Shown here in pieces: positions 15,763 to 48,078 of a DNA stretch of 64,000 nt. The notes beneath the pieces were generated by a model. That model was given only the letters and a program-made list of their open reading frames with translations, ran no database searches and had not been told where the DNA came from. The DNA is from Hypanus sabinus. Lineage: Eukaryota. Numbering within the stretch: position 1 is the stretch's first letter; each line of letters begins with the position of its first letter. The position numbers and the translations under genes are program-made. The DNA lies in the NCBI RefSeq assembly GCF_030144855.1, contig NC_082718.1, positions 92,566,001-92,630,000 on the forward strand, written 5' to 3'.

Positions 15763-16639
15763 TGTCAATGAAGTTACCAGAGTGTTGTAAGAGCCTCTCT
15801 GCTATACTAATGTTAAAATAATTATGCTAACCTGGTCGGCTCCATCTAGGAATGTCAACCAACAGCAATTTACTTGCTCTAATTCTTTGGAAATGACTGT
15901 TGTGGATCACTTGTTTGCAGCTAAGAACTCCAACACAAGATGGCAGTGTTGAAAAGAATGAACACCGAACATCCCTTGTGAAGAATGTCTTTACAAACAA
16001 GGGCGTGTGGGATACTGGGATAGCAGGTGCTTTCCACATCCTGCCCCCAAACCCTCCCGCCGCACCCACAGAATCAAATTAAAATATCTCCAGCGTTGTT
16101 TATTCCATTATTTCACACAGGCCAGCCTGAGCTTCAGTACGTCTATGCATACGTGCACGATTGCACACATGCAGATAGTTGAATTGGGGAAGCTAGAATG
16201 TGGAAGAACGTTGTGATGCACGGTCGTGTGTGCTCAGATATATGCTTGTGATTTAACTGCATGCATGCTCGTATGCAGAGGTACGCTAGTTATTGAGAAC
16301 TATGAGTAGGGCAGCTGTGCAGCAGTGAATGATTTTAATACGCACTGAACTGCTTCACCACATTCTAAACATCACGATGCAGTGTGGCCCGAGAGACCGT
16401 TGCAGCCTCTCCTCCCAGAAGCATGGGGAATCGTGGCCAGGCTGCATGAAGGAGAGCAGAACTGACTTTTAACTTCCATTCTGCAGATATTTGTGGTAAC
16501 ACGAAATCTACTCTAGGAATGTGCTTATCTCGCTGTACTCTGTGAGTAATATGCACAGAACTGCAATTAAATATATTTAGATGGATTTGAATAATGTTTT
16601 GCTCATTTCACTGAGGGCATCTGCAGGACCAATTTACCA

Positions 16640-20485: not shown

Positions 20486-20794
20486 GTTTTAATGGAAGGG
20501 TTGTATGTTATGTATGGGTATTTAGGATTTCCTCTTTCCATAGAAGCAACCGCTTCCTCAGATGAATTCAACCTGCGTGTCTCCATTGTAGCTAGCTTCT
20601 ACCCGTTATAGTGGGCCAATCTCAGGTTGACTGACTGCCCATCAGTATCTGCAGTAATCTATTCATCCAAGAACAACCCTACCTATGGACTTTCTGTCAG
20701 AAGGAAAGTGATGTTAGGAGTTGCTGGGATGGTGCCAAACTGCATGCACCCAGAGGGTGGCTAATCTGTGGAATTCTTTGCCACGGATGACTGT

Positions 20795-23700
20795 AGAGGG
20801 CGTCAGCCGAATTACGTCCTCGATCAGTTGTACTTTCTTAGCATTACTACACGACTAAAGAAGCTATTCTTCGAGGAGCCAGAGAGGAACGGAAATTACT
20901 CTTTAATTCAACAGACATTCGTATAGTTGAAGATTATCCCCCCGAAATCTTTGCCGAAAGAAAGAAATATTGAGAAGTTATGAGTGAAATGTATAAATTA
21001 GATTTAAATCCCTCCCTTCGCTTTCCAGCAAAGCTGATAATTTTCCGTGAAAAATCTCAACCATTGAGAATCTACTCTCCTCACAAGGGATGAGAGTATA
21101 TTAAAAAGTTTAAAGTTAAGCCTACTGAATAAAATATTAAAGATATATCGATTATTCAATAGCCAATTTTGAAGTATCTGTTATATGAGTTGTTTATGGG
21201 GCTTTTGAGTTAAGTACATGTTATACCTTTTCACTCTCTGGTAGTCTCTCTGGTGGTAGATGTAATTCTGTTTTTTACCTTAATTAATACATATATAACT
21301 GTTTTGTAGGGAACGTTTATAGTATTGTACTTTAGTGGTCCGTGTAGGAGCTGTTGTGTATTAATCTTTGTATTTTTTTTATTTGTTTCAATACGTATAG
21401 TTTTAGGTCTGTTATGTACATATATTCATTTATTTTTCTTTTTCGAGAGAAAGAATATACTTTGTAACAATATTTACTCGGATTTATTCTTTCTTTTGAA
21501 TATGTGTTTAAGCTACTTTAGCTGATTCTAAGATGGCCGTGGTTGATTATGTTTTTATTAATGTTAGACACAACATTATAGTAGTTGAATTCTGTTTGTG
21601 CCTTTTATTATAGCTATTTTCCGTGGGATTTCTGTTTTTTTTATATATGGAGCTGCAAGTTGGAGAACAGGGTCAAAGTTGATTAGTTAGCATGTGACCA
21701 GCCTATTGGCTTCTTCCTTTCTATCTATTGGACGGGGGGAGGGGGCAGGGGTCTATTACAGTCGGTGTTTTTCTTGATTGGGCAGTTCTTTTGATGGATT
21801 TCTCTATCGTAAATGTGTCACCCCTTCCGTTTGTACCCGCGACTTTGGTTTAATCTGTACTTAAGTAACATTTCTTTTATATAATATTAAACTCAATTTT
21901 AAACATGGATGTTAATAAAATTAATATAATATCTTGGAATTGGAACAGTGTCAATCATCCCATTAAGCTTAAAAAGATTTTTAAGAAATTAAACACACAA
22001 TGCTGATACTATTTTTGCGCAAGAAAATCATATACGAAAACAGGATGGGGATAGATTTTTTCGCTTTTGGAAAGGTTCTCTTTTTCCCTCACTGTCGGAT
22101 AGTAAAACAAGAGGCGTTTCTATATTACTTAGTCTCAAAACCCTTTTTGTACACCTTAATACTACTACTGATTTGATTGGAAGATATTTAATTGTTACTG
22201 GTTTATTATGCGAGTAAAAGGTAACTCTGGTGAGTGTATACGCACCTAATGTAGATAATTCTGATTTTTTAACGAAACTTTTTTCAGTGTTCCCGAATCT
22301 CAATGAATATAAACTGATCATGGGTGGTGACTTTAACTGTTGCTTAAATCCTGCGATTGACAGGTCATCAACCAATCCGTCGCGTCCTAATAAGGCGGCA
22401 GCTTATATTAACTCTTTTTTATTAGAATATGGCCTTGTTGATATTTGGAGATATAAACACCCGAATGATAAAGATTTCTCCTTTTTTTCACACGTCCATC
22501 ACAAATATTCTCGAATTGATTACTTTTTTTTAGATACACGTCTGTTGTACTCCGTTGCTGAATGTGCGTATGACAGCATTGCGCTTTCAGATCACGCGCC
22601 TTTAAAGTTAACCTTTAAGCTCCCGGATAGAGTTTTGAAAATCTCACAGTGGAGACTGAAGTCCGTTTTGTTACGGGATCCAGCATTTGTTAATTTTATT
22701 AAGGAGCAAATTTCTATATTGTTTGAATTTAATACAACGGAAGGAATGTCAAATCTGCTTATATGGGACACCTTGAAATCTTTTTGAGGGGACAGATAAT
22801 CTCATATTCAGCAGCCTTGAGAAAGAAAACGAAAGCGGAATTGTCAGTGCTTATTAATAAAATTAAACAGATAGATAAAGCGTATTCAGTTAAACCTACT
22901 GAAGACCTATATAAAGAAAGGGTCGAACTTCAATCACAGTATGATTTAGTTCTGACCGTTCCCATTGAACAGCAAATTTTTAAATCTAAAAGTTTATTTT
23001 ATATACATGGGGAAAAATCTGCTAAACTTTTAGCGGGTCAGTTAAAGGCTGGGATGATCAGAAGACAGATTTTAAAAATTCGCCGACCAGATAGAAAAGA
23101 ATCTTTAGATCCTTATGAAATTAATAAGATATTTATGGACTTTTATTCTAATGTTTATAAATCTGAATTCTCTGATATTAATATTACTATGAATAGATTT
23201 TTGCAAAGGTTAAACATACCTCAAATTTTGATTCCAGATGCTGATATGTTAGATGCACCTATTAAATAAGAGGAGATAGCCAAGGCTATATCCTCTATGC
23301 AATTAGGTAAAGCTCCGGGATCTGATGGTTATACGGTAGAATTTTATAAGATCTTTCACGAAACGCTTATAACGCATCTTCATCAAACGTTCACTGATTC
23401 GACATCTTCCGGGAACCTTCCTAAAACTTTTTATGAAGCACTAATTTCATTGATTCCATAAAAAGGGAAAGACCCACTGGAATGAGTATCCAATAGACAT
23501 AGTTCTTTACCGAATGTAGATTTTAAAATCCTCTGTAAGATTCTAGCAAATGGTCTTGAGAGTATCTTGCCTAATGTTATCTCAAACGATCAAACAGGAT
23601 TTATTAAAAATAGGTAATCACATTTTAATATTCGAATATTATTAAATATCATTTATTCCCCTTCAACCAAAGAATCTGAATGTGTTGTATCTTTGGAGGC

Positions 23701-26079
23701 AGAGAAAGCCTTTGATAGGGTGGAGTGGCCTTATCTATTTCAGGTTTTGAAGAGGTTCCATTTTGGTCCAGGATTTATCTCCTGGATTAAATTGATTTAT
23801 CATGCCCCGGTAGCTGTGGTTCTCACTAATAACCAAAAGTATCCTTGCTTTAGATTATATAGAGGTACCCGTCAGGGCAGTCCCCTTAGCCCTCTATTAT
23901 TTAATTTGGCTTTCGAACCACTTGCTATTGCTCTTAGGGATTCTAATTCTGTGCAGGGTATTAGGAGAGGGGGTAAATTTCATAAAGTTTCCTTATGCGC
24001 AGATGATTTATTAGTTGACATTTCAAATCCTAAGAAATCTATTCCTTCTATGTTATCTATATTTATGGAATTTTGTACTTTTTCTGGATATAAACTTAAT
24101 TTACATAATAATGAATTATTTCCTATTAATAATTATTTTGATCAAATACCTTTTAATATTGCCAAAAGCCATTTTACTGACCTTGGTATCAAAATTACAA
24201 AAAAGTTTAAAGACCTGTATAGGTATAATTTCTTCCTTTTAGTTGAATATACTCAACAGTCGCTTTCCAAATGGTCACCTATGTCAATGTCATTGATAGG
24301 TCGAATAAATGGTATAAAATGTTTATTCTACCGAAATTTTAATATATATTTCAAGCAGTTTCCTCTTTTGTTCCAAAAACATTGTTTGATAAAAGAGACT
24401 CTCTGATTTTGTCTTATGTTTGGAAGAATAAAAGCTCTAGAGTGAATAAACTTTAATTGCAAAAATCAAAAAAAGATGGAGAGCTGGCTTTACCAAACTT
24501 TAGATTTTATTATTGGGGAATTAATATTCGCTATATTACATTTTGGATTTATGGTATAGGCGATCAAGATCACCCTTCATGGTTACAGCTGGAGGAAAAT
24601 TCAGTACTGGGGTTTTCGTTAGCTTCTTTATCAGGAGCTCATCTTCCCTTTTTGTTCTCCAGAATAGGTAAACAAGCTCTTAACCCTATTGTTAAACATA
24701 CTTTAAAAATCTGGTTTCAATTTCGTAGATTTTTTGAATTAAATGATTTTTTACTTTCTAGTAATATTTATTTGAAATTTCTTTTTTAAACCAACTTTGG
24801 ATAAGGCTTTTCTAACATGGAAAATTAAGGGAATAAAAACGTTTTTAGATTTGTTTTTGCAAGACTGTTTAATGTCTTTTTCACAGTTAATGGATAAATA
24901 TGATATCTCGAATACACATTTTTTCAGGTATTTACAGGTTGGAAATTTCTTACGTGATTTTTTACCAAATTACCCCTTGATCTGCTCTTCAAATTTGGCT
25001 CATGTTATTAATAGCTATCATTTATAAACAGTTAATGAATGCTCGCACATCACCTAATGATAGGATTCAACGCCCCCTGGGAAGTAGAACTTCAACATTC
25101 ACTCTCAGATAAGCAATGGAGTAAAATTTATTATTTAGTTAATAATTTATCTCTCTGCGTACACCATATTTTAATTCAGTTTAAGATAGTACATAGATGT
25201 CCAAAGATAAATTGGCGCATATTTTTCCTAATATATGCCCTATTTGTGATAGATGTAATGCAGAAGCGGCTACTCTAACCCATTTGTTTTCATCATGTGT
25301 AAGTTTAAATAATTTTTGTAGAGATGTGTTTTGAATATTATCTAAAGTTATAGATATGGATGTTCAACCTAATCCACACAGCAATTTTTGGGATTTCCCA
25401 GAGGAAGCAAGCAAAGTGTCTGCCTCCGCCAAACATGTGATAGCTTTTTCAACTTTACTGGGTAGGAGAGCTATGTTGCTACACTGGAAAGAATCTAACT
25501 CACCCACTGTTAGCTATTGGCTGTCCTCCATCATGTCATGTTTAAGCTTGGAGAAAATTAGAAGCCGGACATTTGATACATCTTTTGATTTTGAACAAGT
25601 CTGACAACCCTTTATTCATTATTTTCACATGATTTAATTTATCTTTATCTATCTATCTATTTGTTTATTTATTTAATCTTTATTCTCTTTGGAGAATATC
25701 CTTGTCCATGAAGGTTCGGAAGGATGAGTTTTTTTTCTCTCTCTCTCTTTCTTTTTAAAGTGTATCCTCATTTGGACTGCCCAATCTTTCTTTTTCTCTT
25801 TTTTGATTTAGTTTACTTAGTGGGGTTTTTCTTTCTCTATCAATAAAATTACGAATCTTTTTTTTACGATTGCCATGAGGAGTTGTAATGTCTCTCTGCC
25901 CTTTGTATATATAACAGCATAATATATTACCTATTTGTGTTTGATATTATATGCTTTTTGTCTTTAATATTGCTGTTTATATGTCTTTTATATTATCTAC
26001 TTGTTTAACTCCTCTTTCGATTTGTATTTGTATATTCATTATTTGAAAATCTATATAAAAGATTGAATAATGAAATGAA
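20795..26079 (+). mobile_element. 5'-truncated, degenerate L1-clade LINE (ORF1 C-terminus, spacer, ORF2 EN-RT-zinc knuckle, 3'UTR)
   Basis: APE motifs VYAPN, GGDFN, SRIDY, SDHAP. RT motifs [28 protein letters not shown]. Cys-rich CDRC..THL. Target-site duplication ATGACTGT at 20787-20794 and 26080-26087. TGAAA-repeat tail. Multiple stops and frameshifts. Confidence 0.9.
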
Positions 26080-30724: not shown

Positions 30725-31533
30725 TCGCTCAGGGTCCGCGTGAACTAGATGCCCTCAAAGCAAAGGTGATTAATGCGCCCGAAATCAGAAATTTATCAAA
30801 TGGTAATAATTTTCTGAAGGGTAAGTTGATCTGAACGAACAAGTTCCGTAATACACTTCCCTTTCTGTAAAGGAGAGATTGCATCTTATCTACAAAACTA
30901 ACTTTATTTCAGAGCTTGTTCGTTAAGAAATTCTTCCTTTCTTTAAAGCAGTTTCCCCAATTTTTTTTATGCCTTGGGGGCCTTACAGTTATCTGAGGGG
31001 TCGGTGGACCACAGGTTGGAAATCCTGTTTTAAGTGAAAGGGTTCTGTGTTATGTATGGGTATTTAGGATTTCCTCTTTCCATAGAAGCAACTGCTTCCT
31101 CAGATGAATTCAACCTGCGTGTCTCCATTGTAGCTAGCTTCTACCCGTTATAGTGGGCCAATCTCAGGTTGACTGACTGCCCATCAGTATCTGCGGTAAT
31201 CTATTCATCCAAGTACAACACTACCTATGGACTTTCAGTCAGAAGGGAAGTGATGTTAGGAGTTGCTGGGATGGTGCCAAGCTGCATGCACCCATATCGT
31301 GATGGTACTGGAACCGGATTCTAGAAAAAAGCCTATTCTAGTGAACTGGAGACAGGAACCGAAGTGCTGGTTCGAAATTAGAGAATTTATTTTCAGTAGA
31401 TAAAATTGAAATCTGGAATGAAGAAGGGATGTCAGTCTTGAAGAAGGATTATCAGGATTTGCAACAGAGATGACTATGAACTTCTTTAACTAGAGGTGGC
31501 GAATCTGTGGAATTCTTTGCCACGGATGACTGC

Positions 31534-34500
31534 AGAGGGCGTCAGCCGAATTACGTCCTCGAGCGGTTGTACTTTCTTTGCATTGTTACACGACTAAAGA
31601 AGCTATTCTTCGAGGAGCCAGAGAGAAACGGAAATTACTCTTTAATTAAACAGACATTCGTATAGTTGAAGATTATCCCCCCGAAATCTTGACCGAAAGA
31701 AAGAAATATCGAGAAGTTATGAGTGAAATGTATAAATTAGATTTAAATCCCTCTCTTCACTTTCCAGCAAAGCTGATAATTTTCCGTGAAAAATCTCAAC
31801 CATTGAGAATCTACTCTCCTCACGAGGGATGGGAGTATATTAAAAAGTTTAAAGTTAAGCCTACTGAATAAAATATTAAAGTTACATCGATTATTCAATA
31901 GCCAATTTTGAAGTATCTGTTGTATGAGTTGTTGATGGAGCTTTTGAGTTAAGTACATGTTATACCTTTTCACTCTCTGGTATGGGACGTGGTCGATTTA
32001 ATTTTGTTTTTTACCTTAATTAATACATATATAACTGTTTTGTAGGGAACGTTTATGGTATTGTACTTTAGTGATCCGTGTAGGAGCTGTTGTGTATTAA
32101 TCTTTGTATTTTTTATTTGTTTCTGTACTTATAGTTTTAGGTCTGTTATGTACATATATTCATTTATTTTTCTTTTTCGAGAGAAAGAATATACTTTGTA
32201 ACAATATTTACTCGGATTTATTCTTTCTTTTGAATATGTGTTTAAGCTACTTTAGCTGATTCTAAGATGGCCGAGGTTGATTATGTTTTTATTAATGTTA
32301 GACACAACATTATAGTAGTTGAATTCTGTTTGTGCCTTTTATTATAGCTATTTTCCGTGGGAATTTTTTTTTATATATGGAGCTGCAAGTTGGAGAACAG
32401 GGTCAAAGTTGATTAGTTAGCATGGGACCAGCCTATTGGTTTCTTCCTTTCTATCTATTGGGCGGGGGGAGGGGGCAGGGGTCTATTACAGTCGGTGTTT
32501 TTCTTGATTGGGCAGTTCTTTTGATGGATTTCTCTATCGTAAATGTGTCACCCCTTCCGTTTGTACCCGCGTTTGGTTTAATCTGTACTTAAGTAACATT
32601 TCTTTTATATAATATTAAACTCAATTTTAAACATGGATGTTATTAAAATGAACATAATATCTTGGAATTGGAACGGTGTCAATCATCCCATTAAACGTAA
32701 AAAGGTTGTTAAGAAATTAAACACACAATGCTGGTACTATTTTTGCGCAAGAAAATCATATACGAAAACAGGATGGGGATAGATTTTTTCGCTTTTGGAA
32801 AGGTTCTCTTTTTCACTCACTGTCGGATAGTAAAACAAGAGGCGTTTCTATATTCCTTAGTCTCAAAACCCTTTTTGTACACCTTAATTCTACTACTGAT
32901 TTGATTGGAAGATATTTAATTGTTACTGATTTATTATGCGAGCAAAAGGTAACTCTGGTGTGTGTATACGCACCTAATGTAGATAATTCTGATGTTTTAA
33001 AGAAACTTTTTTCAGTGTTCCCGAATCTCAATGAATATAAACTGATCATGGGTGGTGACTTTAACTGTTGCTTAAATCCTGCGATTGACAGGTCATCAAC
33101 CAATCCGTCGCGTCCTAATAAAGCGGCATCTTGTATTAACTCTTTTTTATTAGAATATGGCCTTGTCGATATTTGGAGATATAGACACCCGAATGATAAA
33201 GCTTTCTCCTTCTTTTCACACGTCCATCACAAATATTCTCGAACTGATTACTTTTTTTTAGATACACGTCTGTTGAACTCCGTTGTTGAATGTGCGTATG
33301 ACATCATTGAGCTTTCAGATCACGCGCCTTTAAAGTTAACTTTTAAGCTCCCGGATAGAGTTTTGAAAATCTCACAATGGAGATTGAACCCCGTTTTGTT
33401 ACGGGGTCCAGCTTTTGTTAATTTTAAGGAGCAAATTTCTATATTTTTTGAATTTAATACAAAGGAAGGAATGTCAAATCTGCTTATATGGGACACCTTG
33501 AAATCTTTTTGACGGGAGAGATAATCTCATATTCAGCAGCCTTGAGAAACAAAATTAAAGCGGAATTGTCAGTGCTTATTAATAAAATTAAACAGATAGA
33601 TAAAGCGTATACAGTTAAACCTACTGAAGACCTTTATGAAGAAAGGGTCGAACTTCAATCACAGTATGATTTACTTCGGACCTTTCCCACTGAACAGCAA
33701 ATTTTTAAATCTAAAAGTTCATTTTATATACATGGGGAAAAATCTGCTGAACTTTTAGCGGGTCATTTAAAGGCTGGGATGGTCAGAAGACAGATTTTAA
33801 AAATTCGCCGGCCAGATAGAACAGAAACTTTAGATCCTTATGAAATTCAAAAGATATTTATGGACTTTTATTCTAATCTTTATAAATCTGAATTCTCTGA
33901 TAGTAATATCACTATGAATAGATTTTTGCAAAGTCTAAACATACCTCAAATTTCGATTCAAGATGCTGATATGTTAGATGCACCTATTAAACAAGAGGAT
34001 ATAGCCAAGGCTATATCCTCTATGCAATTAGGTAAAGCTCCGTGACCTGATGGTTATACGGTAGAATTTTATAAGACCTTTCACGAAACGCTTATACCAC
34101 ATGTTCATCAAACGTTCACTGATTCTACATCTTCTGGGAACCTTCCTAAAACTTTTTATGAAGTACTAATTTCATTGATTCTATAAAAAGGGAAAGACCC
34201 ACTGGAATGTGTATCCTATGGACATATTTCTTTACCGAATGTAGATTTTAAAATCCTCTGTAAGATTCTAGCAAATGGCCTTGAGAGTATATTGCCTAAT
34301 GTTATCTCAAACGATCAAGCAGGTTTTATTAAAAATAGGTACTCACATTTTAATATTCGAAGATTATTCAATATCATTTATTCACCTTCAACCTAAGAAT
34401 CTGAATGTGTTGTTTCTTTGGAGGCAGAGAAAGCCTTTGATAGGGTGGAGTGGCCTTATCTATTTCAGGTTTTGAAGAGGTTCAATTCTGGTCCAGGATT

Positions 34501-34656
34501 TATCTCCTGGATTAAATTGATTTATCATGCCACGGTAGCTGTGGTTCTCACTAACAACCAAAAGTATCCTTGCTTTAGATTATATAGAGGTACCCGTCAG
34601 GGCTGTCCCCTTAGCTCTCTATTATTTAATTTGGCTTTCGAACCACTTGCTATTGC
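31534..34656 (+). mobile_element. 5' part of the same L1 insertion in the B monomer, broken within RT
   Basis: Same 5' junction (atgactgc-agagggcgtc). ORFs 31689, 32901, 33488 and 34418. Ends at ccacttgctattgc, followed by AT-rich filler. Confidence 0.9.
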
Positions 34657-35179
34657 AATAATAATTAATAACCTCAACCATCAAGCTCTAGAACAAAAAC
34701 GACACTCATTCTGTTTCAGCTGTTCCCACAACCAATGATCACACTTTATGAACACTTTACATTGTTACTTCATGCTCACCTCATTTATTGCTATTTATTT
34801 ATATTTGCATTTGCACAATGGTTCCCATGCTGAACTTCTCTATGATTTTAGATGAAATTATAATACCTACAAAGAGTTGTTTTTCTGATTAGACTGAGGA
34901 AGATTGTGCTACAATTACTGGCGGGCTATGAGCAGAATTGACAGCCTCACTGGAGACCCATTCCTGGGCTGATTTTTCCATTGTGCAAAGCAGAACAGTA
35001 ACACAGTCACAACATTTCAGAGACAAGTAAGCTTATTCAGAATGATCATATATGACGTTCTACATACAGCAAAATTCAACGCATTGCTAAGTTGTATTCA
35101 AAGTTTGTTAACTTTGCTCCCAGAAAGCATAAGATTCAATGCAATGCATGCAGAAAAGCAATATTACAACAGTCACGGT

Positions 35180-36300
35180 GGAATTCAATATGCAGGTAAA
35201 TTGGGAAAATCAAGTTGGTGCTGGATTACTGGAGAGGAGGATTTCCAGAGTGCCTATGAGAGGGCTTTCTAGAGCAGCTGCTGGTTGAGCCCACTAGACG
35301 GCCAGCTATTCTGGATTAGGTGTTGTGCGATAAACCAGAGTTGATTAGAGAGCTTAAGGTAAAAGAAACCTCAGGGGAAATTGATCATAATTTGATTGCA
35401 TTCACCCTGAAATCTGAGAAGGGAAGTTAAAGTCAGATGTATCAGTATTACAGTGGAGTAAAGGGAATTACAGAAGCATGAGGGAGGATTTGACCAGAAT
35501 AACTGGCAGGGCTGATAGTAGAACAGCAATACCTAGAATTTCTGGAAGCTATTCAGAAAACTGAGGATATATACATCCCAGAGAGGATGAAGCACTTTAA
35601 AGGAAAGATGACAAACCATGGCTAACAAGAGAAGTCAAAGCCAACATAAAAGCCAAACAGACGGCATATAATAGAGTGAAAATTAGTGGGAAGTTAGAGG
35701 ATTGGGGAGCTTTTAAAAAGCAACAGAAGGCATTAAGAATATCACTTGGAAGGTAAGGATGCAATACAGAAGTGAGCTAAGCAATAATATTAAAGAGTTT
35801 AATACAAACAGCTTCCTCAGATACATAAACAATAAAAGAGAAGTGAGAGTGGATATTGGACCATTGCAAAATCACGCTGGACTGGTAGTAATGGGAGGCT
35901 ATGAAATAGCAAAGAAACAGACCAATTATTTGGCATCCATTTTCACTGTGGAAGACACTAGCAGGAAGGTGGAGGCTCCAGTGACAGGGGTCGTGAAGTG
36001 TGAGAAGCTGCCATGACTGGAGAGAAGACTCTTGGAAAGCTGGAAGGTCTGAAGGTAGATAAGTTACCTCGACCAGATACTGTATGCTCCAGATTTCTGA
36101 AGAGATTGTGGAGATATCAGGCAATATCTTTCAAGAATCACTGGATTCTGGAATGGTTCTGGAAGATGGGAAAATTGCCAAAGTCACCACACTCTTCAAA
36201 AAAGGAGAGAGAAAGGAAAAGGAAACTGTAGGCCAGTTCATCTCACCTCGGTGTTGGGAAGATGTCAGAGTTGATCATTAAGGATGAGGTCTCAGGGTAC
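35180..36300 (+). mobile_element. CR1 ORF2 fragment (paralog)
   Basis: ORFs 35759, 36013 and 36084. Confidence 0.8.
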
Positions 36301-37450
36301 TGGTAAATTGGTCCTGCAGATGCCCTCAGTGAAATGAGCAAAACATTATTCAAATCCATCTAAATATATTTAATTGCAGTTCTGTGCATATTACTCACAG
36401 AGTACAGCGAGATAAGCACATTCCTAGAGTAGATTTCGTGTTACCACAAATATCTGCAGAATGGAAGTTAAAAGTCAGTTCTGCTCTCCTTCATGCAGCC
36501 TGGCCACGATTCCCCATGCTTCTGGGAGGAGAGGCTGCAACGGTCTCTCGGGCCACACTGCATCGTGATGTTTAGAATGTGGTGAAGCAGTTCAGTGCGT
36601 ATTAAAATCATTCACTGCTGCACAGCTGCCCTACTCATAGTTCTCAATAACTAGCGTACCTCTGCATACGAGCATGCATGCAGTTAAATCACAAGCATAT
36701 ATCTGAGCACACACGACCGTGCATCACAACGTTCTTCCACATTCTAGCTTCCCCAATTCAACTATCTGCATGTGTGCAATCGTGCACGTATGCATAGACG
36801 TACTGAAGCTCAGGCTGGCCTGTGTGAAATAATGGAATAAACAACGCTGGAGATATTTTAATTTGATTCTGTGGGTGCGGCGGGAGGGTTTGGGGGCAGG
36901 ATGTGGAAAGCACCTGCTATCCCAGTATCCCACACGCCCTTGTTTGTAAAGACATTCTTCACAAGGGATGTTCGGTGTTCATTCTTTTCAACACTGCCAT
37001 CTTGTGTTGGAGTTCTTAGCTGCAAACAAGTGATCCACAACAGTCATTTCCAAAGAATTAGAGCAAGTAAATTGCTGTTGGTTGACATTCCTAGATGGAG
37101 CCGACCAGGTTAGCATAATTATTTTAACATTAGTATAGCAGAGAGGCTCTTACAACACTCTGGTAACTTCATTGGCACCCATAAGACATAGGAGCAGAAT
37201 TGGGCCATTCAGCCCATCGATTCTACTCCATCATTCCATCATGATTGATTCATTATTCTTCTCAATCTCGTTCTCCTGCCTCATTCCCATACCTTTCATG
37301 CCCTGATTAATCAAGAACCCATCAACCTCCACTTTAAATGCACCAAATGATTTCACCACCAAAGTCATCCGTGGCAAAGAATTCCCCAGATTTGCCACCC
37401 TCTGGTTTAAGAAGTGCATAGTCATCTCTGTTGCAAATCCTGATCATCCT

Positions 37451-38455
37451 TGGGAAACAGAACTTAACCTTACTATCCCTATTGAGAATTGGGATAAAAT
37501 TCTTCAATTAGTCAATTTATCATCTATATGTGCTAAACATTCATTAATATAGTTTAAAGTTGAGCACAGGGCTCATATGTCCAAGGATAAGTTGGCTCGT
37601 TTTTATTCCTATATAAATCCTATATGTGACAGATGTCATTCTGAGATAGCGTCTTTATCTCAAATGTTTTGGTCAGGTCCGCTTTTGAAAAAATATTGGA
37701 AAGACATTTTCGATATTTTTCCACGGTATTGAACATTGATTTACAACCTCATCCTATTACTGCAATTTTTGGTTTACCAATAATGGACTCAATCCATTTA
37801 TCTTCTTCTGCTTGTCGAATGATTGTATTTCTTACATTAATGGCTAGAAGATCTATTTTGTTGAATTGGAAATAAATTAATCCCCCTACTGTATTTCATT
37901 GGCTTTCTCAAACTATGTTATGTCTAAATTTGGAGAAAATTAGAAGTGTTGTATTTCACCCTTCTATTAAATTTGAAAAGACATGGAGACCATTTATTCA
38001 ATATTTTCATATGATGTAATTTGACCCTGCTCCAAACCTATTCGTTTTTCCGCTTTTGATTATACATATGTTGAGACAATCGGATTTGGCAACACTGATG
38101 ATTTTGTATTTTTTTTTATTAAAGATACTATAAACAGCCCCTTATTCATTATATTTTTTCTTCCTTTTTTCTCTTTATTAGTTATTAGGCTTTAGATTAC
38201 TTTTTCTTAGGGTTATTTTTTTTTTTGTTTTTCTCTTTTCTTTTTTTTACATATATATGATATACCAAGTTTTGCTTTGTTTATATGATAATTGTATCAT
38301 TCATGATTTCGGAAGACTTGACTATATTGTAACTATTGATTGTGTATCCTTTCATGTTCAGTTTAAAATTTGAAGTTTGTAATCCCACTATCTATGTATT
38401 AATCTTATCATGTTGATATTAATAATAAGAAGAAGAAGATTAAAAAAGAAGGAAA
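37451..38455 (+). mobile_element. Mirror copy of the second L1 fragment
   Basis: ORF 37669-37875 is identical to 15065-15271. Confidence 0.8.
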
Positions 38456-38932
38456 AGATTACTGCAGATACTGATGGGCAGTCAGTCAACCTGAGATTGG
38501 CCCACTATAACGGGTAGAAGCTAGCGACAATGGAGACACGCAGGTTGAATTCATCTGAGGAAGCAGTTGCTTCTACGGAAAGAGAAATCCTAAATACCCA
38601 TACATAGCATACAACCCTTCCCATTAAACCAGGAAATCCAATCTGTGTTCCACCGACCCTTCAGGTAATTGTAAGACCCCAAGGCATTAAAAAAATTGGG
38701 GAAGCTGCTTTAAAGAAAGGAAGAGTTTCTTAACGAACAAGCTCTGAAATAAACTGAGTTTTGTAGATACGATGCAATCTCTTCTCTACATAAAGGGAAG
38801 TGTATTAGGGAACTTGTTCGTTCAGATCAACTTACCCTTCCGAAAAAATATTACCATTTGATCATTTTCTGCTTTCGAGCGCATTAATCACCTTTGCTTT
38901 GAGGGCATCTAGTACACGCGGACCCTGAGCGA

Positions 38933-39948
38933 TCAGAAAGCTTTTACAGAGCTCGTTTGCTGATCCACAGTCTGCTCCTCCCTGGATGTTCCGGGTTCAG
39001 TGGCTGATCTGGAAGAGCTTAAAATGAGATCAAATAGAGCCTTCTCGAAAGCATGTTGAAACTACGAAGTAGAAAAATCGTAAACAATGGGATCGGCCAC
39101 ACTCAGATACGTTCAGATACGTTATAAACAGCGTATTGTAAAAGATATTCACTGCTGTGTGATACGACTTGCAGTCGAAGGGTCTTCTTAGTTTAGTGAC
39201 CAAAACCGCGACCACAGCAACACTGGTGGGCAAGAAGCAAATGACAAAAACTGCAGCCACGACTGTCACAAGTTTCACAGTTCGCTTATATTTACCCCGC
39301 ATTCCAGTTTCCATCTGCCGTAACCTCCAGATGATGGAGGACGTAGAGAAGAGGATTACTGAAACTGGCAAAAGAAACTGAAAGAATATAAAAATAAAGT
39401 CAGTCCAAACTGCTGTGGGACTCAGAGCCTTGTTAATGCTGAAAGGCTCACAGTTTCTCACGTTGTGCTGTTTGAAATCATGTTTGTCTATCAGCAAGTG
39501 CAAACAAATAGCCGCTGCTACAATCCACAGACCGCCGGCTATCACCACCGCACACCTTGTAGTGATCTTGTTTACTTTGTGGAGTGGATGGACCACCTTA
39601 AAGTAACGATCGATCGCAATAACCATGAGGAAAGAAGACGCTGCCAATCCGGTTCAGGCAAATCATAAAAATGTTCAGTCGACACAGTCCATCACCAAAA
39701 ATCCAGTCCTTCCCTCGGAGAAAATAATCAGCTCGGAAGGGTAGACAGCACAATAACAGAGTGTCCGCAATCATCAGATTCAGTGAATACACAATACTCG
39801 GTTTCTGGGACTTCACATGAACACAAAAGATCCACAAAGCAACCGTATTTCCAACAATCCCGAGGATGAATGTGATGATAATTACGGGCGGGTTGTAGGA
39901 CGAGTTAACATCTTCACCAGGAGCACATTCCGGGGTCGAGTTCGCCAT
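38933..39948 (-). pseudogene. HCAR-like GPCR pseudogene psi5 (mirror of psi2)
   Basis: Same +1 insertion (39634) and +7 insertion (~39103-39122) as psi2. Confidence 0.92.
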
Positions 39949-42900
39949 TGTACTAAAAAGCGGCCGCACAGTCAAGATGTTTCAGAGCGGAGCGAACTCT
40001 TTCGAAGTTGAAGAAGCTGGTCTTCGTCGTATGAGTTTGTTCTCCTGTGGGTGGGGTATATGGGCGGGATGAAATAGTCAAGAGCACCAATAAGTTGTGC
40101 GGTCAAATCATTGACAACGTTCCGGAAAAACTAGAAGCAGAATCATTCAAATGAAGTAACAATAAAATACATTTAGTTTGTATTGCCAGGCTTGAAATTC
40201 TGCAGTACTTCGTTTTCTTGTTGAGTGCTTGAACAAGTTTACATTAACAATTAACTAATCATGGGGCATAATTTTAATCTGATTGGAGGGAGGTATAAGG
40301 GGATATCAGGGGCAGAGTTTTTTAAGCAGCGAGGTTGGGTGCGAGGAACACGCTGCCAGGTTTGGCGGTGGAGGCAGATACATCAGGGGCATTTCAGGCA
40401 CATGGATGACAGAAAAATGGAGGACTATGTAGGACGGAAGGATTAGACTGATCTTAAAGTCGATTAAAATGTCGCCAACATTGTACTGTAATATGATATG
40501 CTCTTTATAAGGGGGGGGGGGGGGTGCTGTTCTGTAATAGAAATCAACCCCAAAAATTATATCACTCTGTAATTGAAGTTATTTTTACAAAATCTCCTCA
40601 CGACAATTCATATCAAAATGCATTTGAATAGGAATTAAAACCAGAAAACGAATGAAACTCCCAGCATGTCAACTAATGACAGAAGAGCTTATGCTTCAGC
40701 ATGTAGGTCTCTTTTTATTTTCAATTTCAGCAGTTTTTGATTGTCTTTGGACGTAGAGATGCCTCTCTGAACATCACCTGATATCAGTGAAGGTGCTCTG
40801 TTTAACAAACACTTTTTATATTTTCAGGAAATGTGATAGAGACGTCCTCTTGTTTGGGGAAGTGATCACCCCGAATGGGATCTGACAGCGCATTAACCAG
40901 ATACTAGATTCGGCGAGAACACAGCATTGTATTCGAATTCCATTATTTCTGAACACCAGGGATATAGATAGAGTAAATGCAAGAACGGTTTTCACTGAAA
41001 TTGGGTGGGACGGCAACTAGATGTCCTGGGTTAAGGTGGGGGAGTGAAAAGATTAAGGGGAACGGGGGCTGGGGATTTCTTCACTCGGAGGGTTGCGAGA
41101 GGGTGGAACCAGCTGCCAGCACAAGTGGGGCATGAAAGTTCAATTTAAACGTATAATAGAAGTTACCATAGGTACATGGATGGTAGAGCTGTGGAAAGCT
41201 TTGGTACCGGTGCAGATCAATGCTAACTGGCAGATTAAATGGTTTAGTACGCAATACATAGGCCAAAGGGCATGTTTCTGTGCTGTACGTTTCTATGTTT
41301 CTGATTTTACATGACAATAAAATATCGACAAAGCAGTTGTATTTCTGACTAGTCCTAGGACGATTGTTATAATAATTACTGGTGGGCTGTGAGTAGAATC
41401 GACTACCTCGATGGAGACACGTTGCTGGGCTGAATTGTCCATTGTTCAAAACGCCACAGTAAACACAGTCACCGTCTCCGAGATAAGAAAACTTAATCAA
41501 AGATGAAAATATCTTCATACAGCAAAACTCAGAACATCAGTAAGTTGTGTCCAAATTATTAGCAGTGCTGTAAAGATTTAACTCAAAGAAATATATCCAG
41601 CGTGATTAACAGAATGTAATAGCTACTCGATATTAGGTACATAAACCATTTTATAGCCCTATCAAAGCTCTGAAACTTTCTTTATTATTCAGAGTGCAGT
41701 GCCAATTCAGTTGAAATGCACCTTCTCTACCTAAACTAAAGTTGCCCCTTTGGAAGCCCACCCTACTCCAGTTCCTCTCATAAACTGATAATTTGGTCCA
41801 ACAGGTGCCCCCAGTGAGCTGAGCAGAATATTATTCAAATCCATCTCATTGATTATACAGAATTGCTTTTCCGTACACTTTATTCACACAGTACAGAGAG
41901 AGACAACCGTATTCCCAGAGTAGATTTTCTGTTTCCACAAGGATCTACTGAATGAAGGTTAGAAGTGATTTCTGCTCTCTTTCATGCAGCCTGCGCATGG
42001 TTTATCATGGTTGTAGGAGGGGAGGCAGCAATAGTTCCTCGGGCCACTCTCCATTCATGGTGTTTGGGATGTGCTGAGGCAATTCAGTCTGTATTCAAGT
42101 CATTCACTGCTGCCCTACTCATAGTGATAAATACCAGGCATACGTATGCATGCACGCACTTAAGGCACAAATATATATGTGAGCACGCACATGCGCGCAT
42201 GCACACGCACAACCAACCTTGCATCACAACGTTCTTCCGCAGTCACCTCACCCCAATGCAACTATCTGCATGCGTAAGTGGAAAATAATGGTACTAAGGT
42301 CAACAGAAGTATTTTGATTGGATTCTGGGGGTGGGGGGTGGGGCTGTAATAAAAGAACCTGCAGTCCCAGAACCGCACACGTTCCTGTTTGCAAAGGCAT
42401 TCTTCACAAGGACTGTTGAGTTCAACACTGCCATCTCGGGTTTGAGTTCTATGCTGCAAACAAATGATGCACGAATTTCATTTCAAAAGAATTCATGATC
42501 AAAAAAACTCAGTGGAGAGTAAATTTCTCAAGAACAGCCACTCTGCCCTTATCGGCAGGTTTCTGGTGTTCCCACAACCACTGATTTCACGTTAAGGACG
42601 CTTTATCTTGTTACTGCATGTTCTCGTTAGACATTGCTGTTTACTGTACTTATATCTCAGTTTGCACAGTCTGGTGTTCATCGGTCCCGTTAACAGTTAC
42701 GTGATCTATAGATTTGTTCAGTATGTCCGCAGGAAAAAGAATCTCAGGGTTGTGTGTGTGTGGTGACACGTATGAGCTCTGATATTAGATTTTACTTTGA
42801 AATGTCAACATGATTGTCTGATTAGATATCTGCATTAATGAGCGGGGGATAGGTGTATCTAATAAAGTGGCCACTGAGTGTGTACTGGGATTTAGGCAAA

Positions 42901-45900
42901 AGTCCATAATGGCCACTGGCCACTGTGAGCGCAGGGATACTGCAGGTACGGTACCTGCTGACCAGAATTCCGGGCAGTCCTGCTGATCTCAATCTGGGAA
43001 ATACTTCAGATTCTACAGGATCTCCCAGAGTATCAGAGCAGCCCTGCAGGCAGATTATTTAAGCAATGGAAGCACGAGCCTGTTGAAGACCAGCGGCACC
43101 ACTTGCACCTCTGTCGTTCCCTCACATCGCCTGTGATTTATCCCGAAGAGGAGACAATGGCGCTTTTGCTGGCATCTTCGGAACAGCTCTATTTCCATCT
43201 TTAATATCTCCATTTTCCCCTTTCGGGGTCCTTTTCACGATCCTGACCTGGAGTTACACGGTGACCTCGGGAACCGCTCCCGGGGTGTCACGACTGCCCG
43301 CTATTCGATATGTCAGGGATGCAGCCTGAGAGAGTTAGCTCGCCTCCGGAGTTCCGGGATCTCGTGGCCCTGGAGTCGGGCGGACCGAAGGTCGGTGCCT
43401 CTGCAGGAATCCGGTGTCGCGGGAGACGGAAGATCGAAAGCAGCGAGCTGGCTGCCGGCTGTGTGCCCGGAGACCCCAGTTCTCGGGGCGCAGAGCTCGG
43501 AAAAAGCGACGCAACGGACTTCTAACATCACAGAGCAGAGAGTCGTTTGTTATGTCTCCCCTCTCGCTACGAAACGGAGATATCGCTTTCTCCCTTATTA
43601 GGGGGAGAGGGAGAGGGAGAGGGAGAGGCAGGGGGCGGAGAGAGGGAGAGAGAGAAGGAGAGAGAGAGAGGCGGAGAGTGAGGGAGAAACAGAGAGTGGG
43701 GGAGAGAGAGAGAGGGAGAGAGAGAGAGAGAGAGAGGGAGATAGAGAGAGGGAGAGAGAGAGTGAGATGGGGGGGGGGGGAGAGACTGAGAGCCTGTGGT
43801 ATGTCGAATACCGGACGAACGAGTAGTCTTTGGGGTGCCTTCGCCCACCGTTGTGCGGTAACTGCGCACATGACTGCCTCATTCAACAAATACAAGGTGC
43901 CATCTGACTTTGGGAACCCCTGGCCTACAGCTGCTCAGAGTACAGAAAGAGCTTTCGGGATGGAACTGAGAAGCTCATGCCCATACTTCAGAAACTCAAT
44001 GGGCAGCACACACCTCACCTACACCCACCCGACACTCCATCAGGAGGCATCTGCCTTTCCGTGGAGGACCAGAAAAACATCAAGTATTCGACTGGAATTA
44101 GGCTACTCAGACCAGTGAGTCTGCTCCACTCCCTAAGCATGTCTGAATTTCTCTTTTCAACTCCATTCTCCCAACTTCATTCTATAACCCTTAACCCCAA
44201 ACAAACACCTACAAATCGTTATCTGAAATACACTCAATGATTTGACCTTCACCGCCCTGGATGACAATGAATTCCACAGATTCCCCACACTCTGCCTGAG
44301 CAAATTCCTCATCCCAGTTCTAGTGAGATGCCCACTTATTCTGAAACTGTGCCCTTGGATACAAGATCATTTGATTCTCTCCTACTGATGGAAACATCCT
44401 CTCCACTTGCACATTGTCCAGGTTTGTGGTTCTGTATATTCAGCTGTCTAATTATCTCAGAATGTAAAAAAAAATATCTGTAGGGGTGGACAGGGGTTGA
44501 GAATGCTCCTGATCTCAAGTGGTGGACATATTGCAGACCTCATGTGTATTTAATACTCTGTAATAGTTGAGAACTCTTGTATATATATATATTGATTGAT
44601 TGATTGATTAAGGATTCTTGTTATAATTAATTTTAATTTCTGTGTAAATTACATACATTGCATACGTCATCACATGGTATGTGTGCGACTCCTTTGAAGT
44701 AAAAGAACTAACTTAAGACATATCTCTCAGCTCTTGTTCGCTTTTGAATTAGTTTAATATTTTGAAGTTTCAAAACATAACACAGAGTCATCAAACAATT
44801 TTGCTTCCTCGTAATCATGCAAGCAATGGAGCACAAAATGATATAATTGAAGCTGCTGTATTTAAGCAACTGTTCTTTTTGTATTTAAGGAATTGTAATA
44901 AAAGAAGTTCATCTACTTCCTCTGGTTCGGGGAAATGATTCAGCTTGAGTGGCAAGGTTCCTGAACAGAATGGTTTAAAAATATCTGAGTGGATGAAAAT
45001 CTAACCTGGTGTGCAATGGAGATGCAGAGAGACATGATGGGACCAGGAAAGAGGAAACTGTCAAAACAGCAGAGGGCTTCAGAGGTATCACAACCATCTG
45101 TGATCCTTTGGCTTGTAGGGAAATATTAGAATCAAACTGTGAGTTATAAAACTAATGCTGGAGGGTAAATAGAGTCTTCGAGGGAAATATATCAGGGATT
45201 CCTATGAGGGATGAAAACCTGATGCTCAGTGGTGGGTCGTGATCCTGTTGGAAATATCAGCAAGTGTCCAGGAGAGAGTAATTTGCATGAGCACTGACAC
45301 ACTATCATTGTCAGCAGGTCTGATGACATTGCAGGAGTCATTCTTATTGAAGGGAGAGTTGCAAATTCAGGTTCACTCGGTCAGAGTGAGCAAATTGAAA
45401 CAATTAGTGCTGAGTTGGCAGAGAGTGATGAATGGATCTGGAGAAGGAAAGGTCTTTGAAAAGGGACCCAGTCTTGTGGAGGATTCTAGAAATGGGGAAC
45501 CTCAGTGTTGAGGGCACCTGACCATGGGAACTCAGATTTTTAAGCACTTCTCAAGAGAGTCTAGAACCAGCATCACTCAAAATTCTCATGGGAATAGCAG
45601 TAGATGAATAGCCTGCAGTAAACTGCTCCTAGTGTTACACCATAAGGCCATAAGATATAGGTGCAGAGTTAGTCCATTTGGCCCATTGACTCTGATCTGC
45701 CATTTCATCATGGCTGACCTACTTTCCCTCTCAGCCCCAATCACCTGCCTTGTTTCCATATCTCTGCATGCCCTGACTAATTGAGAACCTATCAACCTCT
45801 GACTTTAATACTCCCAATGGCCTGGCATCCACAGCCACCTGTGGGAACGGATTGGACAGAGTGACCTTTCGCTGGATAAAGAAATTGTTCCTCATCTCCA

Positions 45901-46904
45901 TTTAAAAGGCGTCCTTCTATTCTGAAACTGTGCCTTCTGGCCTTACATGACCCCACCAGAGGAAACATCCTCTCCACATACAAATCTGGTAGGTGGTAGA
46001 ATGCGGCAGGAAGAAAAGAGGATGTGGAGAGAATTTTTAAAATGTTATATTAACTTAGTATTTGGGTAAAAGGAGGTTTGACAGTCACCAGAAACATAAT
46101 GGGGTAAATCATTCATTTCTCACTGTGACGTTGTGCTTTGCAAAGAGAATGAACAATATGTGCACCCAAAAACCAACAATTTTAAGATTTTTAGTTGCCA
46201 TGAACCACACTGAACATGCACTTTGAAACACAAATTGAACATGAACTTTGTCACACAAATGGATCTGTGACAAGCCTCACTCTATAGTAAACAGCTTCTT
46301 TCACCATCAGCTCTTTAACCATATTATGAGCAATTTCTCATTCTATTTCTTCACTCAGATTGACTCCCTCCCTTCCCATCCAGGGTATGTGGTGTTAAAC
46401 TAAAAGCAATCCCAAATGGTCAGAGTGGAAGTGTGCGCTTACGTTCTCAATAAGGCCCCCGATTTCAGGTGCACTGTTAGCTGCCAGATCCAGGAGGAAC
46501 GTTGGCATCATTCACGTTCCTACTCACGAATAATAGTCTAGAAACAGCTACTGCACATACGTTAAGGATTTGACCACACGTTACAATACACTCAGTGGCT
46601 ACTTTATTAGGTAAATCGTCAACCAAATAAAGAGGTGACTGAGTGTATGTTCATATTCCTCTGCTGCTGTAGCCAATCTATTTCAAGGCTCAGCATTCTG
46701 AGATGCTCATTTGCATCATGCTGTTGTAACAAATGGTTATCGGAGTTCCTGTCAGCAAGAACCCACCTGGCCATTCTCCTCTGGCCTCTCTCATTAACAA
46801 AACGTTTTCACCAACAGAATTGCTTCTCACTGGATGTTTTTTTGGCTTCTTAGTCCATTCTCCAATTAAGAGCAATAATTAATTAATTTATAATATTAAT
46901 TGTT

Positions 46905-48078
46905 ATTTTTTTTACCAAATTACCCCTTGATCTGCTCTTCAAATTTGGCTCATGTTATTTTTCAGTTTAAACCTTTTCAAAAATGATTAATAGTTATCAT
47001 TTATAAACAGTTAATGAATGCTCGCACATCACCTAATGATAGGGTTCAATGCTCCTGGGAAGTAGAACTTCAAAATGCACCCTCAGATAAGCAATGGAAT
47101 AAAATTTATTATTTAGTTAATAATTCATCTATCTGCGCACGCCATATTTTAATTCAGTTTAAGATAGTACATAGGGCCCATATGTCCAAAGATAAATTGG
47201 TGCATATTTTTCCTAATATATGCCCTATTTGTGATAGATGTAATGCAGAAGTGGCTACTCAAATCCATATGTTTTGGTCATGTGTAAGTTTAAATAATTT
47301 TTGTAGGGATGTGTTTGGAATATTATCTAAAGTTATAGATATGGATGTTCAACCTTATCCACTTACAGCAATTTTTGGGATTTTCCCAGAGGAAGCAAGC
47401 AAAGTGTCTGCCTCCGCCCAACATGTGATAGCTTTTTCAACTTTACTGGCTAGGAGAGCTATTTTGCTATACTGGAAAGAATCTAACTCACCCACTGCTT
47501 GCTATTGGCTGTCCTCCATCATGTCATGTTTAAGCTTGGAGAAAATTAGAAGCCGGACATTTGAGACATCTTTTGATTTTGATCAAGTCTGGCGACGCTT
47601 TATTCAATATTTTCACATGATTTAATTTATCTTTATTTATTTATTTTTCTTTATTCTCTTTGGAGAATATCCTTGTCCATGAAGGGTTGGAGATGACTGG
47701 AAGGATGTGCTTTTTTTTTCTCTCTCTTTCTTTTTTAATTTTATCCTCATTTGGACTGCCCGATCTTTCCTTTTCTATCTTTATTTTCTTTCTCACTTTT
47801 TTGATTTAGTTTAGTTAGTGGGGGTTTTCTTTCCCTATCAATAAAATTTCCAATCTTTTGTTTACGATTGCTATGAGGAGTTGTAATTTCTCTCTGCCCA
47901 TTGTATATATAGCAGCATAATATATTACCTGTTTGAGTTTGATATTATATGCTTTTTGTCTTTCAAATTGCTGTTTTTATGTCTTTTATATTATCTACTT
48001 GTTAAACTCCTCTTTCAAATTGTATTTGTATATTCTTTTATTTGAAAATCAATAAAAAAGATTGAAAAATGAAATTAA
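46905..48078 (+). mobile_element. 3' part of the broken L1 (ORF2 C-terminus and 3'UTR)
   Basis: Resumes at the position equivalent to ~24957. ORF 47014-47625 contains CPICDRC..HMFWSC. Ends at TSD ATGACTGT 48079-48086. Confidence 0.88.

What the first reader, a model, noticed from the sequence alone, without database searches (positions are those of the whole stretch)
34657..46904. 12.2-kb circularly permuted gene unit inserted in reverse inside an L1: signature of extrachromosomal-circle reintegration
Seen: the L1 after gene B4 stops at 34656 (equivalent to 23931 in the unbroken L1) and resumes in the same orientation at ~46905 (equivalent to ~24957), running to its TSD at 48079. This is therefore an insertion with ~1.0 kb of target deletion, not an inversion. 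Read on the minus strand, the insert starts inside the gene-upstream Tc1 remnant (equivalent to ~18428). It runs through the upstream region, gene psi5, the 3' flank and CR1, and ends only ~180 bp short of its own start in unit coordinates (equivalent to ~18250/28786). It is thus one whole repeat unit opened at a single point. Inference: a unit-length circle looped out of a tandem array, was linearised with ~180 bp loss, and was captured at a break in the L1. Two independent template switches landing 180 bp apart in a 12-kb unit is less parsimonious.
Basis: partly seen in the sequence, partly recalled or inferred. Interest (0 to 1): 0.85.

Follow-up and report, generated by a model that had tools for sequence, protein, structure and literature searches.

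The report
Repeat-length gene unit inserted inside L1
In a stingray receptor-gene cluster, one older gene unit about one repeat long sits backwards inside a broken L1 element; it is a real single insertion that may have come from a DNA circle, but the sequence cannot prove the circle.

Summary
An L1 of the HCAR-like receptor array stops at 34656 and resumes at 46907 in the same orientation, with 1,025 bp missing. Between the halves lie 12,206 bp of a reversed "long-form" unit and a 44-nt AT-rich filler.

The unit runs from repeat coordinate 18424 round to about 18261, so it is one period minus about 162 bp. The filler carries the insert's last 14 nt fused to the L1 bases just 3' of the left breakpoint, bases deleted from this broken L1. 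Both junctions were therefore made in one event in an intact L1.

- The insertion is old. It lies in a 32.4-kb higher-order repeat, with a second copy in this window at 6036-18245.
- The scan also noted a further copy just beyond the window end (s1-184442).
- The long form lacks the L1 (empty site), so it is an older paralogue.
- No long-form unit in native or tandem context is visible.

A once-opened unit circle explains the repeat length best (about 0.45). A two-break linear fragment or replicative template switching gives the same sequence. The kind is known from the cattle KIT locus and human segmental duplications. This is a plausible, unproven new example.

The parts
31533..34656 (+). 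5' part of the target L1 (unit B). It ends inside the reverse-transcriptase region at the equivalent of 23931 in the intact L1.
   Evidence: 95-96% identity to 20794-23931; same 5' junction and TSD as the other L1 copies.
34657..46862 (-). Inserted long-form gene unit, 12,206 bp, read on the minus strand. In order: upstream region, 6.2-kb long-form-only block, HCAR-like pseudogene, linker, and 3' flank ('alpha').
   Evidence: colinear with unit coordinates 18424 to about 18261 of the next period. The L1 is absent (empty site).
34657..34680 (-). Left junction J1 and the AT-shifted last 24 nt of the insert. The join to L1 is blunt or has 1-2 nt of overlap (GC).
   Evidence: 17 of 24 positions match the short-form unit. 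All 7 differences are G/C to A/T.
38930..39950 (-). HCAR-like pseudogene of the insert, with a +1 insertion at CDS position 315 and a +7 insertion at 838. Coordinates are approximate.
40042..46235 (-). 6.2-kb block found only in the long form. It holds an ancient degenerate copy of the 3' flank.
37363..37368 (-). Empty L1 target site in the long form. The TSD sequence is present once (equivalent to 15572-15577).
46863..46906 (.). 44-nt AT-rich filler at right junction J2. At 46867-46887 (minus strand) it holds a 21-nt copy of the insert's alpha end fused to L1 bases 23930-23936.
   Evidence: 20 of 21 positions, 0 of 20,000 shuffles reach the score; the 11-mer occurs in the window only in the two fillers and at the breakpoint position of the two intact L1s.
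46907..48078 (+). 3' part of the same L1, equivalent to 24957-26079. The TSD follows at 48079-48085.
6036..18245 (+). Second copy of the filler plus insert (previous copy of the 32.4-kb higher-order repeat), now in the opposite orientation. It is flanked on the left by the reversed L1 3' part at about 4874-6035.
   Evidence: K2P 0.006 to the copy at 34872-46862. The filler differs from the other copy's filler at one base.
18029..18072 (+). Homologous crossover between the insert's alpha flank and the beta flank of the neighbouring gene. This is the edge of a fold-back palindrome whose arms are 1-2500 (reversed) and 18085-20584.
   Evidence: the arms have K2P 0.0016.
20794..26079 (+). Intact L1 of unit A, used as reference. 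A second intact copy starts near 53163.

Best explanation
Shown: a single double-strand-break repair event put one period-length copy of an older long-form HCAR-like gene unit, in reverse, into the reverse-transcriptase region of an intact L1 in a short-form unit. It removed 1,025 bp of L1.

Inferred: the immediate substrate was a free DNA fragment with defined ends.
- The left join is blunt.
- The right join was made by error-prone, templated end joining, which left a 44-nt filler.
- The insert's alpha end is used at the same terminal nucleotide both in the left junction and in the filler copy.

Inferred: the most likely source of a fragment that is one repeat period minus about 162 bp is a unit-length circle. 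It would have been shed from the tandem array by recombination between neighbouring units, then opened once and trimmed.

Shown: later events.
- The block of insert plus two short units (32.4 kb) was amplified in tandem.
- The reversed insert supplied inverted homology. That homology drove a fold-back at 18029-18072 and gene conversion of a frameshift into the neighbouring gene.
For: - L1 halves are colinear, in the same orientation and equally diverged.
- The filler contains the alpha end plus L1 bases 23930-23936, which are deleted from this broken L1. This places both junctions in one event in an intact L1.
- Insert length is one period minus 162 bp. The chance for two independent breakpoints is about 2 x 162 / 12,368 = 2.6%.
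- Tandem arrays are known to shed circles of exact repeat multiples (PMC3225859). Germline small circles are enriched in duplicated DNA (PMC8617514).
- Circular intermediates are accepted for the cattle colour-sidedness translocations (Durkin et al. 2012, cited in PMC12235870) and proposed for human segmental duplications (PMC7450558).
- The right junction is present in two paralogous copies that differ by SNPs and indels. It is therefore inherited, not a one-off assembly error.
Against: - No circle junction can be recognised, because the head-to-tail join of a tandem unit is native.
- No donor is visible. Every long-form copy in the window descends from this insertion.
- The long form has an empty L1 site. 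Any donor array must have been an older, unseen one, or a single long unit embedded among short units.
- The length coincidence was the reason the case was picked, which weakens it.
- Templated multi-step fillers are also typical of replicative template switching.
- Only one genome was examined, and read support could not be checked.
Confidence: 0.45

Rival explanations
1. Replicative template switching (FoSTeS/MMBIR). A nascent strand left the L1 at 23931 and copied 12.2 kb of a chromosomal long-form unit on the opposite strand. It then made several short switches, which produced the filler, and returned to the L1 at 24957. No extrachromosomal molecule is involved.
For: The filler is a chain of short templated pieces: L1 bases next to the departure point, then the alpha end again. 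The pieces share 4-5 nt of microhomology (TATT). Such chains are the hallmark of this pathway. PMC7450558 invokes replicative interaction for similar cases.
Against: Start and end of the long copy would fall 162 bp apart in repeat coordinates by chance (about 2.6%). The alpha end is left at the identical nucleotide twice, which suggests a physical template end rather than a continuing chromosome. No retained donor is seen in the window.
Confidence: 0.25
2. Cut-and-paste of a linear fragment. Two breaks at nearly the same position in two adjacent units released a one-period fragment. The fragment was captured, reversed, at a third break in the L1 a few kb away. The donor site was closed by annealing of the overlapping repeat.
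For: The fragment appears to have defined physical ends. The gene just downstream of the insert (beta lineage: G1, the G2 3' part, G4) carries a complex indel, ACCAG in place of a 13-nt stretch, at unit coordinate 18246-18250. That is exactly where the insert ends. This model needs no separate long-form array.
Against: It needs two breaks at homologous positions, either by coincidence or at an undemonstrated fragile site. Simple rejoining predicts a 162-bp duplication in the downstream gene, and none is present. The indel may be an ordinary lineage variant.
Confidence: 0.2
3. This was my own first reading. The left junction would be merely the boundary of a later 32-kb tandem or 18-kb inverted segmental duplication, unrelated to the right junction. 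The 'insertion' would then be an illusion.
For: 1-18245 is the reverse complement of 34680-52953 at 98.7%. The right junction therefore occurs twice in the window and the left junction only once.
Against: The filler at the right junction copies L1 bases from exactly the left breakpoint, fused to the insert's left-junction end. The L1 halves are equally diverged. The continuity of the other copy into gene G2 is through a 44-bp crossover about 200 bp before the insert's end, not native continuity.
Confidence: 0.03
4. Assembly artefact: mis-joined or falsely duplicated haplotypes in a repeat-rich region.
For: Many near-identical copies (99-99.9%) and a palindrome are hard to assemble. No reads were available to me.
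Against: There are no gaps in the window. The right junction with its filler is present in two copies that differ by 0.6-1% and by indels. The structure is internally coherent, including the shared frameshift and the crossover.
Confidence: 0.04

Closest known systems
Serial translocation by circular intermediates at the cattle KIT locus (colour-sidedness; Durkin et al. 2012, listed in PMC12235870)
   Same: A chromosomal segment reappears elsewhere with its ends circularly permuted. This is read as excision, circularisation, re-opening at another point and insertion in the germline.
   Different: There the source is single-copy. The head-to-tail junction inside the insert is therefore novel and diagnostic, and the donor is known. 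Here the source is a tandem repeat, the junction would be native, and no donor is seen.
Circular DNA intermediates in human segmental duplications (Chicote et al. 2020, PMC7450558)
   Same: Block order is reversed from A-B to B-A. Breakpoints show only microhomology and short indels, with no homology between donor and acceptor.
   Different: Those are large, dispersed duplications with the donor retained and a proposed replicative interaction. Here a 12-kb unit lies inside its own gene cluster, and donor status is unknown.
Extrachromosomal circles that are exact multiples of tandem repeats (Cohen et al. 2010, PMC3225859), and germline small circles enriched in duplicated DNA (PMC8617514)
   Same: They give a ready source of molecules exactly one repeat period long from a tandem gene array.
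   Different: Those papers detect circles physically. Reintegration of such a circle into the germline genome is not what they show, and it is not shown here either.
Polymerase-theta-type end joining with templated insertions (PMC5068794, PMC4912351)
   Same: The filler is built from short copies of sequence next to the break ends, primed by 4-5 nt of microhomology, together with a deletion at the target.
   Different: The enzyme cannot be inferred from sequence. The 19 nt at 46888-46906 have no template in the window.

Membership tests
Insertion through a circular DNA intermediate (eccDNA reintegration) | Insert is circularly permuted relative to its source and holds a novel head-to-tail (circle) junction | tested here: inconclusive
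   The insert spans unit coordinates 18424 to about 18261. In a tandem array the head-to-tail join is native, so no novel junction can exist.
Insertion through a circular DNA intermediate (eccDNA reintegration) | Length equals a whole number of repeat periods when the source is a tandem array | tested here: met
   12,206 bp, which is one period minus the 162 nt at 18262-18423.
Insertion through a circular DNA intermediate (eccDNA reintegration) | Identified donor locus or array with matching breakpoints | tested here: not met
   No native or tandem long-form unit is in the 64-kb window. The copy at 6036-18245 carries the same filler, so it descends from the insertion.
Insertion through a circular DNA intermediate (eccDNA reintegration) | Non-homologous junctions (microhomology, short fillers) at the acceptor site | tested here: met
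   J1 is blunt or has 1-2 nt of overlap. J2 has a 44-nt filler.
Insertion through a circular DNA intermediate (eccDNA reintegration) | Physical evidence of the circle | not testable with these tools
   Needs circle-enriched sequencing of germline DNA.
Replicative template switching (FoSTeS/MMBIR) | Chains of short templated segments from nearby sequence at the junction | tested here: met
   A 21-nt piece of the filler equals the alpha end plus L1 23930-23936.
Replicative template switching (FoSTeS/MMBIR) | Donor sequence retained (copy, not move) | not testable with these tools
   No donor is visible in the window, and genome DNA could not be fetched.
Simple inversion | Flanks of the reversed segment are each other's former neighbours | tested here: not met
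   The flanks are two halves of one L1 in the same orientation, with 1,025 bp missing between them.
LINE-1 (identity of the target element) | ORF2 with endonuclease and reverse transcriptase, target-site duplication, empty site in a paralogue | tested here: met
   (ORF2p, 1.7e-42). TSD ATGACT(G), with the empty site at 15560-15590.

The most novel reading that the evidence does not exclude
A unit-length circle shed by a tandem receptor-gene array re-entered the germline genome of a cartilaginous fish, a few kb from its origin and inside an L1. The reversed pseudogene unit then founded a new 32-kb higher-order repeat. It also supplied the inverted homology that produced a fold-back palindrome and spread a frameshift by gene conversion. 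That would be a complete natural history of circle reintegration reshaping a gene cluster.
Probability: 0.4. Interest if true: 0.6.

Novelty: new member of a known kind. Interest (0 to 1): 0.42.

Why it matters
Germline reintegration of circular DNA is proposed as a source of gene-order change (bioRxiv 10.1101/2022.06.22.497135), but few cases are well documented.

Circles from tandem arrays are the most abundant kind. Their reinsertion is almost invisible because they carry no novel junction. A unit-length piece landing inside an L1, with a filler that ties both junctions to one event, is about as clear a footprint as sequence alone can give.

The locus also shows the consequences of a reversed insertion in a gene array:
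- a new higher-order repeat;
- a palindrome formed by crossover between the insert and a neighbouring gene;
- conversion of a working receptor gene by the inserted pseudogene.

It remains a candidate. Only comparison with relatives or direct detection of circles can settle it.

Tried and rejected
1. First reading: the left junction is only the edge of an 18-kb inverted or 32-kb tandem duplication. Rejected by the filler evidence and by the equal divergence of the L1 halves.

2. The copy at 6080-18245 as native tandem donor. Rejected because it has the same filler and L1 3' piece on its left. It joins gene G2 through a crossover at about 18029-18072, while the other copy keeps its own sequence type for about 200 nt more.

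3. Simple inversion within the first higher-order repeat. Rejected because the left flank at 1-2500 is a complete reversed gene 3' part, 99.84% identical to 18085-20584. That is a fold-back, not a flip.

4. Three-break reshuffle without loss. It predicts a 162-bp duplication in the downstream gene, which is not seen.

5. The filler as leftover native unit sequence, or as a sign of more than one round of copying on a circle. Not supported: the L1-derived 7-11 nt argue that it was made at integration.

6. Pfam scans of ORF pieces for the Tc1 and CR1 labels gave nothing. The linker at 14918-15450 is instead an antisense L1-like fragment.

7. Fetching flanking genome DNA by exact-protein look-up. 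The protein is in GCA_030144855.1, but the DNA file was too large.

8. No template was found in the window for the remaining 19 nt of the filler.
Full report
**Setting**

The window is a tandem array of single-exon HCAR-like receptor genes.
- The 335-aa ORF at 19177-20184 matches solved HCAR2 structures at 9e-72 and Pfam 7tm_1.
- The exact protein is in NCBI assembly GCA_030144855.1. PMC12946260 names this as the Atlantic stingray Hypanus sabinus.
- Short-form units are about 10.5 kb. Each holds a 5.3-kb L1 at 20794-26079 and its equivalents. The L1 has endonuclease and RT hits, a PDB L1 ORF2p hit at 1.7e-42, and a 6-7 bp target-site duplication.

**The observation**

- L1 homology stops at 34656, equivalent to 23931 of the intact L1, inside the RT domain.
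- It resumes at 46907, equivalent to 24957, in the same orientation, and runs to the duplicated target site at 48079.
- 1,025 bp of L1 are missing.
- BLAST gave 95% identity for the 5' half and 89% for the 3' half. The difference comes from gaps.
- Substitution identity is 94.0-97.2% just before the break and 94.5-94.7% just after it.

**The insert**

Read on the minus strand, 46862 down to 34657 is colinear with a unit.
- The blocks in order are: upstream region, a 6.2-kb block absent from short forms, the gene block, a 1.0-kb linker, and the 3' flank.
- It starts at unit coordinate 18424 and ends at 18246-18261.
- The 162 nt in between (18262-18423) are present in all five short-form units and absent from the insert.
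- Its receptor gene is broken by a +1 insertion at CDS position 315 and a +7 insertion at 838.
- The long form has an empty L1 site, with the target sequence present once at 15572-15577. This lineage therefore predates the L1 that all short forms share.
- The linker holds an antisense L1-like fragment, 68% identical to L1 25197-25640.
The translation of 18269-18592 does look Tc1-like to me, but that rests on my own knowledge and was not tested.

**Junctions**

J1 is a blunt or 1-2 nt join. The last 24 nt of the insert still match the unit at 17 positions, and all 7 differences are G/C to A/T.

J2 has a 44-nt AT-rich filler at 46863-46906.
- In unit orientation, 21 nt of it reproduce the last 14 nt of the insert's other end, with a 1-nt gap. 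These are fused through a TATT overlap to L1 bases 23930-23936, the bases immediately 3' of the J1 breakpoint.
- None of 20,000 shuffles of the filler reach this score.
- The 11-mer TATTGCTCTTA occurs in the 64-kb window only in the two fillers and at that position of the two intact L1s. The chance expectation is 0.05 occurrences.
- Those L1 bases are deleted from the broken L1. The L1 was therefore intact when the event happened, and both junctions were made together.
- This overturns my first reading, that J1 was only the edge of a later duplication.
- The other 19 nt of the filler have no template in the window.

The pairwise relationships are as follows.
- 1-18245 is the reverse complement of 34680-52953 at 98.7% identity.
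- 18246-31640 is a direct copy of 50614-64000.
- Divergences are K2P 0.006-0.010.

The simplest account is a 32.4-kb higher-order repeat.
- Each copy consists of the reversed insert, the L1 3' part, gene G4, an intact L1, gene G5 and the L1 5' part.
- One copy spans 34657 to about 67038.
- The previous copy has its first 15.6 kb turned round.
- Another first-stage note (s1-184442) reports the same 12,232-bp structure starting 3,039 nt beyond the window end. That is exactly one period (32,382 bp) after 34657. I could not check it.

Consequences for the dating of the insertion:
- J2 with its filler is therefore present twice in the window (46863-46906 and 6036-6079, one base different).
- The two copies differ in flanking SNPs and indels. 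The junction is thus inherited and older than the amplification.

**The turned-round copy**

Gene G2 is a chimera.
- Up to about 18029 it is 100% identical to the insert's 3' flank (alpha type).
- From about 18072 it is identical to the reversed gene at 1-2500 (beta type; K2P 0.0016).
- The insert at 34680-34870 keeps alpha-type sequence for about 200 nt more.

A simple flip is excluded, because the left flank is a complete reversed 3' gene part.

It also means that the apparently seamless tandem context of the copy at 6080-18245 is secondary. That copy is not a donor.

G4 of the second repeat shares the +1 frameshift of the inserted pseudogene, whereas G1, G2, G3 and G5 are intact. This points to gene conversion between the inverted neighbours. 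Both the fold-back and the conversion are consequences of the reversed insertion.

**Mechanism**

Shown:
- It was one event, in an intact L1, with a target deletion.
- The insert is one period minus 162 bp.
- One join is blunt and the other is templated and error-prone.

Inferred:
- The substrate was a free fragment with fixed ends. The same terminal nucleotide of the alpha end is used in J1 and in the filler copy.
- A once-cut unit circle gives the period length automatically. Two independent breaks or template switches would land within 162 bp in repeat coordinates about 2.6% of the time.
- Tandem arrays shed circles of exact repeat multiples (PMC3225859), and germline small circles are rich in duplicated DNA (PMC8617514).

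Against certainty:
- The permutation is not diagnostic in a tandem array.
- No donor is visible.
- The case was selected for its coincidence.
- Chained templated fillers are equally typical of replicative switching (PMC7450558 discusses both).

My estimates are:
- circle route, about 0.45;
- template switching, 0.25;
- a two-break linear fragment, 0.2;
- artefact or other, under 0.1.

One loose end concerns the beta lineage (G1, the G2 3' part, G4). It has a complex indel, ACCAG in place of 13 nt, at unit coordinate 18246-18250, exactly where the insert ends. It could be a donor-site scar or an ordinary variant.

**Comparison and verdict**

The closest known cases are the cattle KIT translocations by circular intermediates (Durkin et al. 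2012, cited in PMC12235870) and the proposed circular intermediates of human segmental duplications (PMC7450558).
- This would be a new member of that kind, in a tandem array of a cartilaginous fish.
- It fails the one feature that made those cases convincing, namely a novel circle junction with a known donor.
- The interest is moderate.

Noticed in passing
window 1-2500 (minus strand) versus 18085-20584, with the crossover at 18029-18072: Fold-back palindrome. The arms are 99.84% identical (4 differences in 2,500 nt) and the spacer is 15.6 kb. Gene G2 is a chimera of the insert's 3' flank and the neighbouring gene. The left arm runs off the window start.
   Followed up: partly
window 51545-52553 (G4) versus the pseudogene at 12995-14010 and about 38930-39950: G4 shares the +1 frameshift at CDS position 315 with the inserted pseudogene. 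The equivalent gene 3' parts of the previous repeat copy (G1, G2) are intact. This explains why the G4 3' part is 2% diverged from them, and it is likely gene conversion between inverted neighbours.
   Followed up: partly
window 10296-11637 (and 41300-42650 on the minus strand): The 6.2-kb long-form-only block contains an ancient, degenerate copy (67-77% identity) of the unit's 3' flank (equivalent to 15881-18212). The long form may therefore be the relic of an older dimer.
   Followed up: no
window 15560-15590: The long-form unit has the empty target site of the L1 that all short-form units carry. The TSD sequence ATGACT is present once.
   Followed up: yes
window 14918-15450: The linker of the long form holds an antisense L1-like fragment, 68% identical to the L1 3' region.
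   Followed up: partly
window 18246-18250, 2337-2341 and 50614-50618: The beta-lineage genes have ACCAG where the other lineages have a 13-nt stretch (GGTTGGGGGTAGC). This lies at the very unit coordinate where the insert ends. It could be a donor-site scar or a coincidence.
   Followed up: no
window 34657-34680: The last 24 nt of the insert differ from the short-form unit at 7 positions, all G/C to A/T. This is a mutation cluster right at the junction.
   Followed up: no
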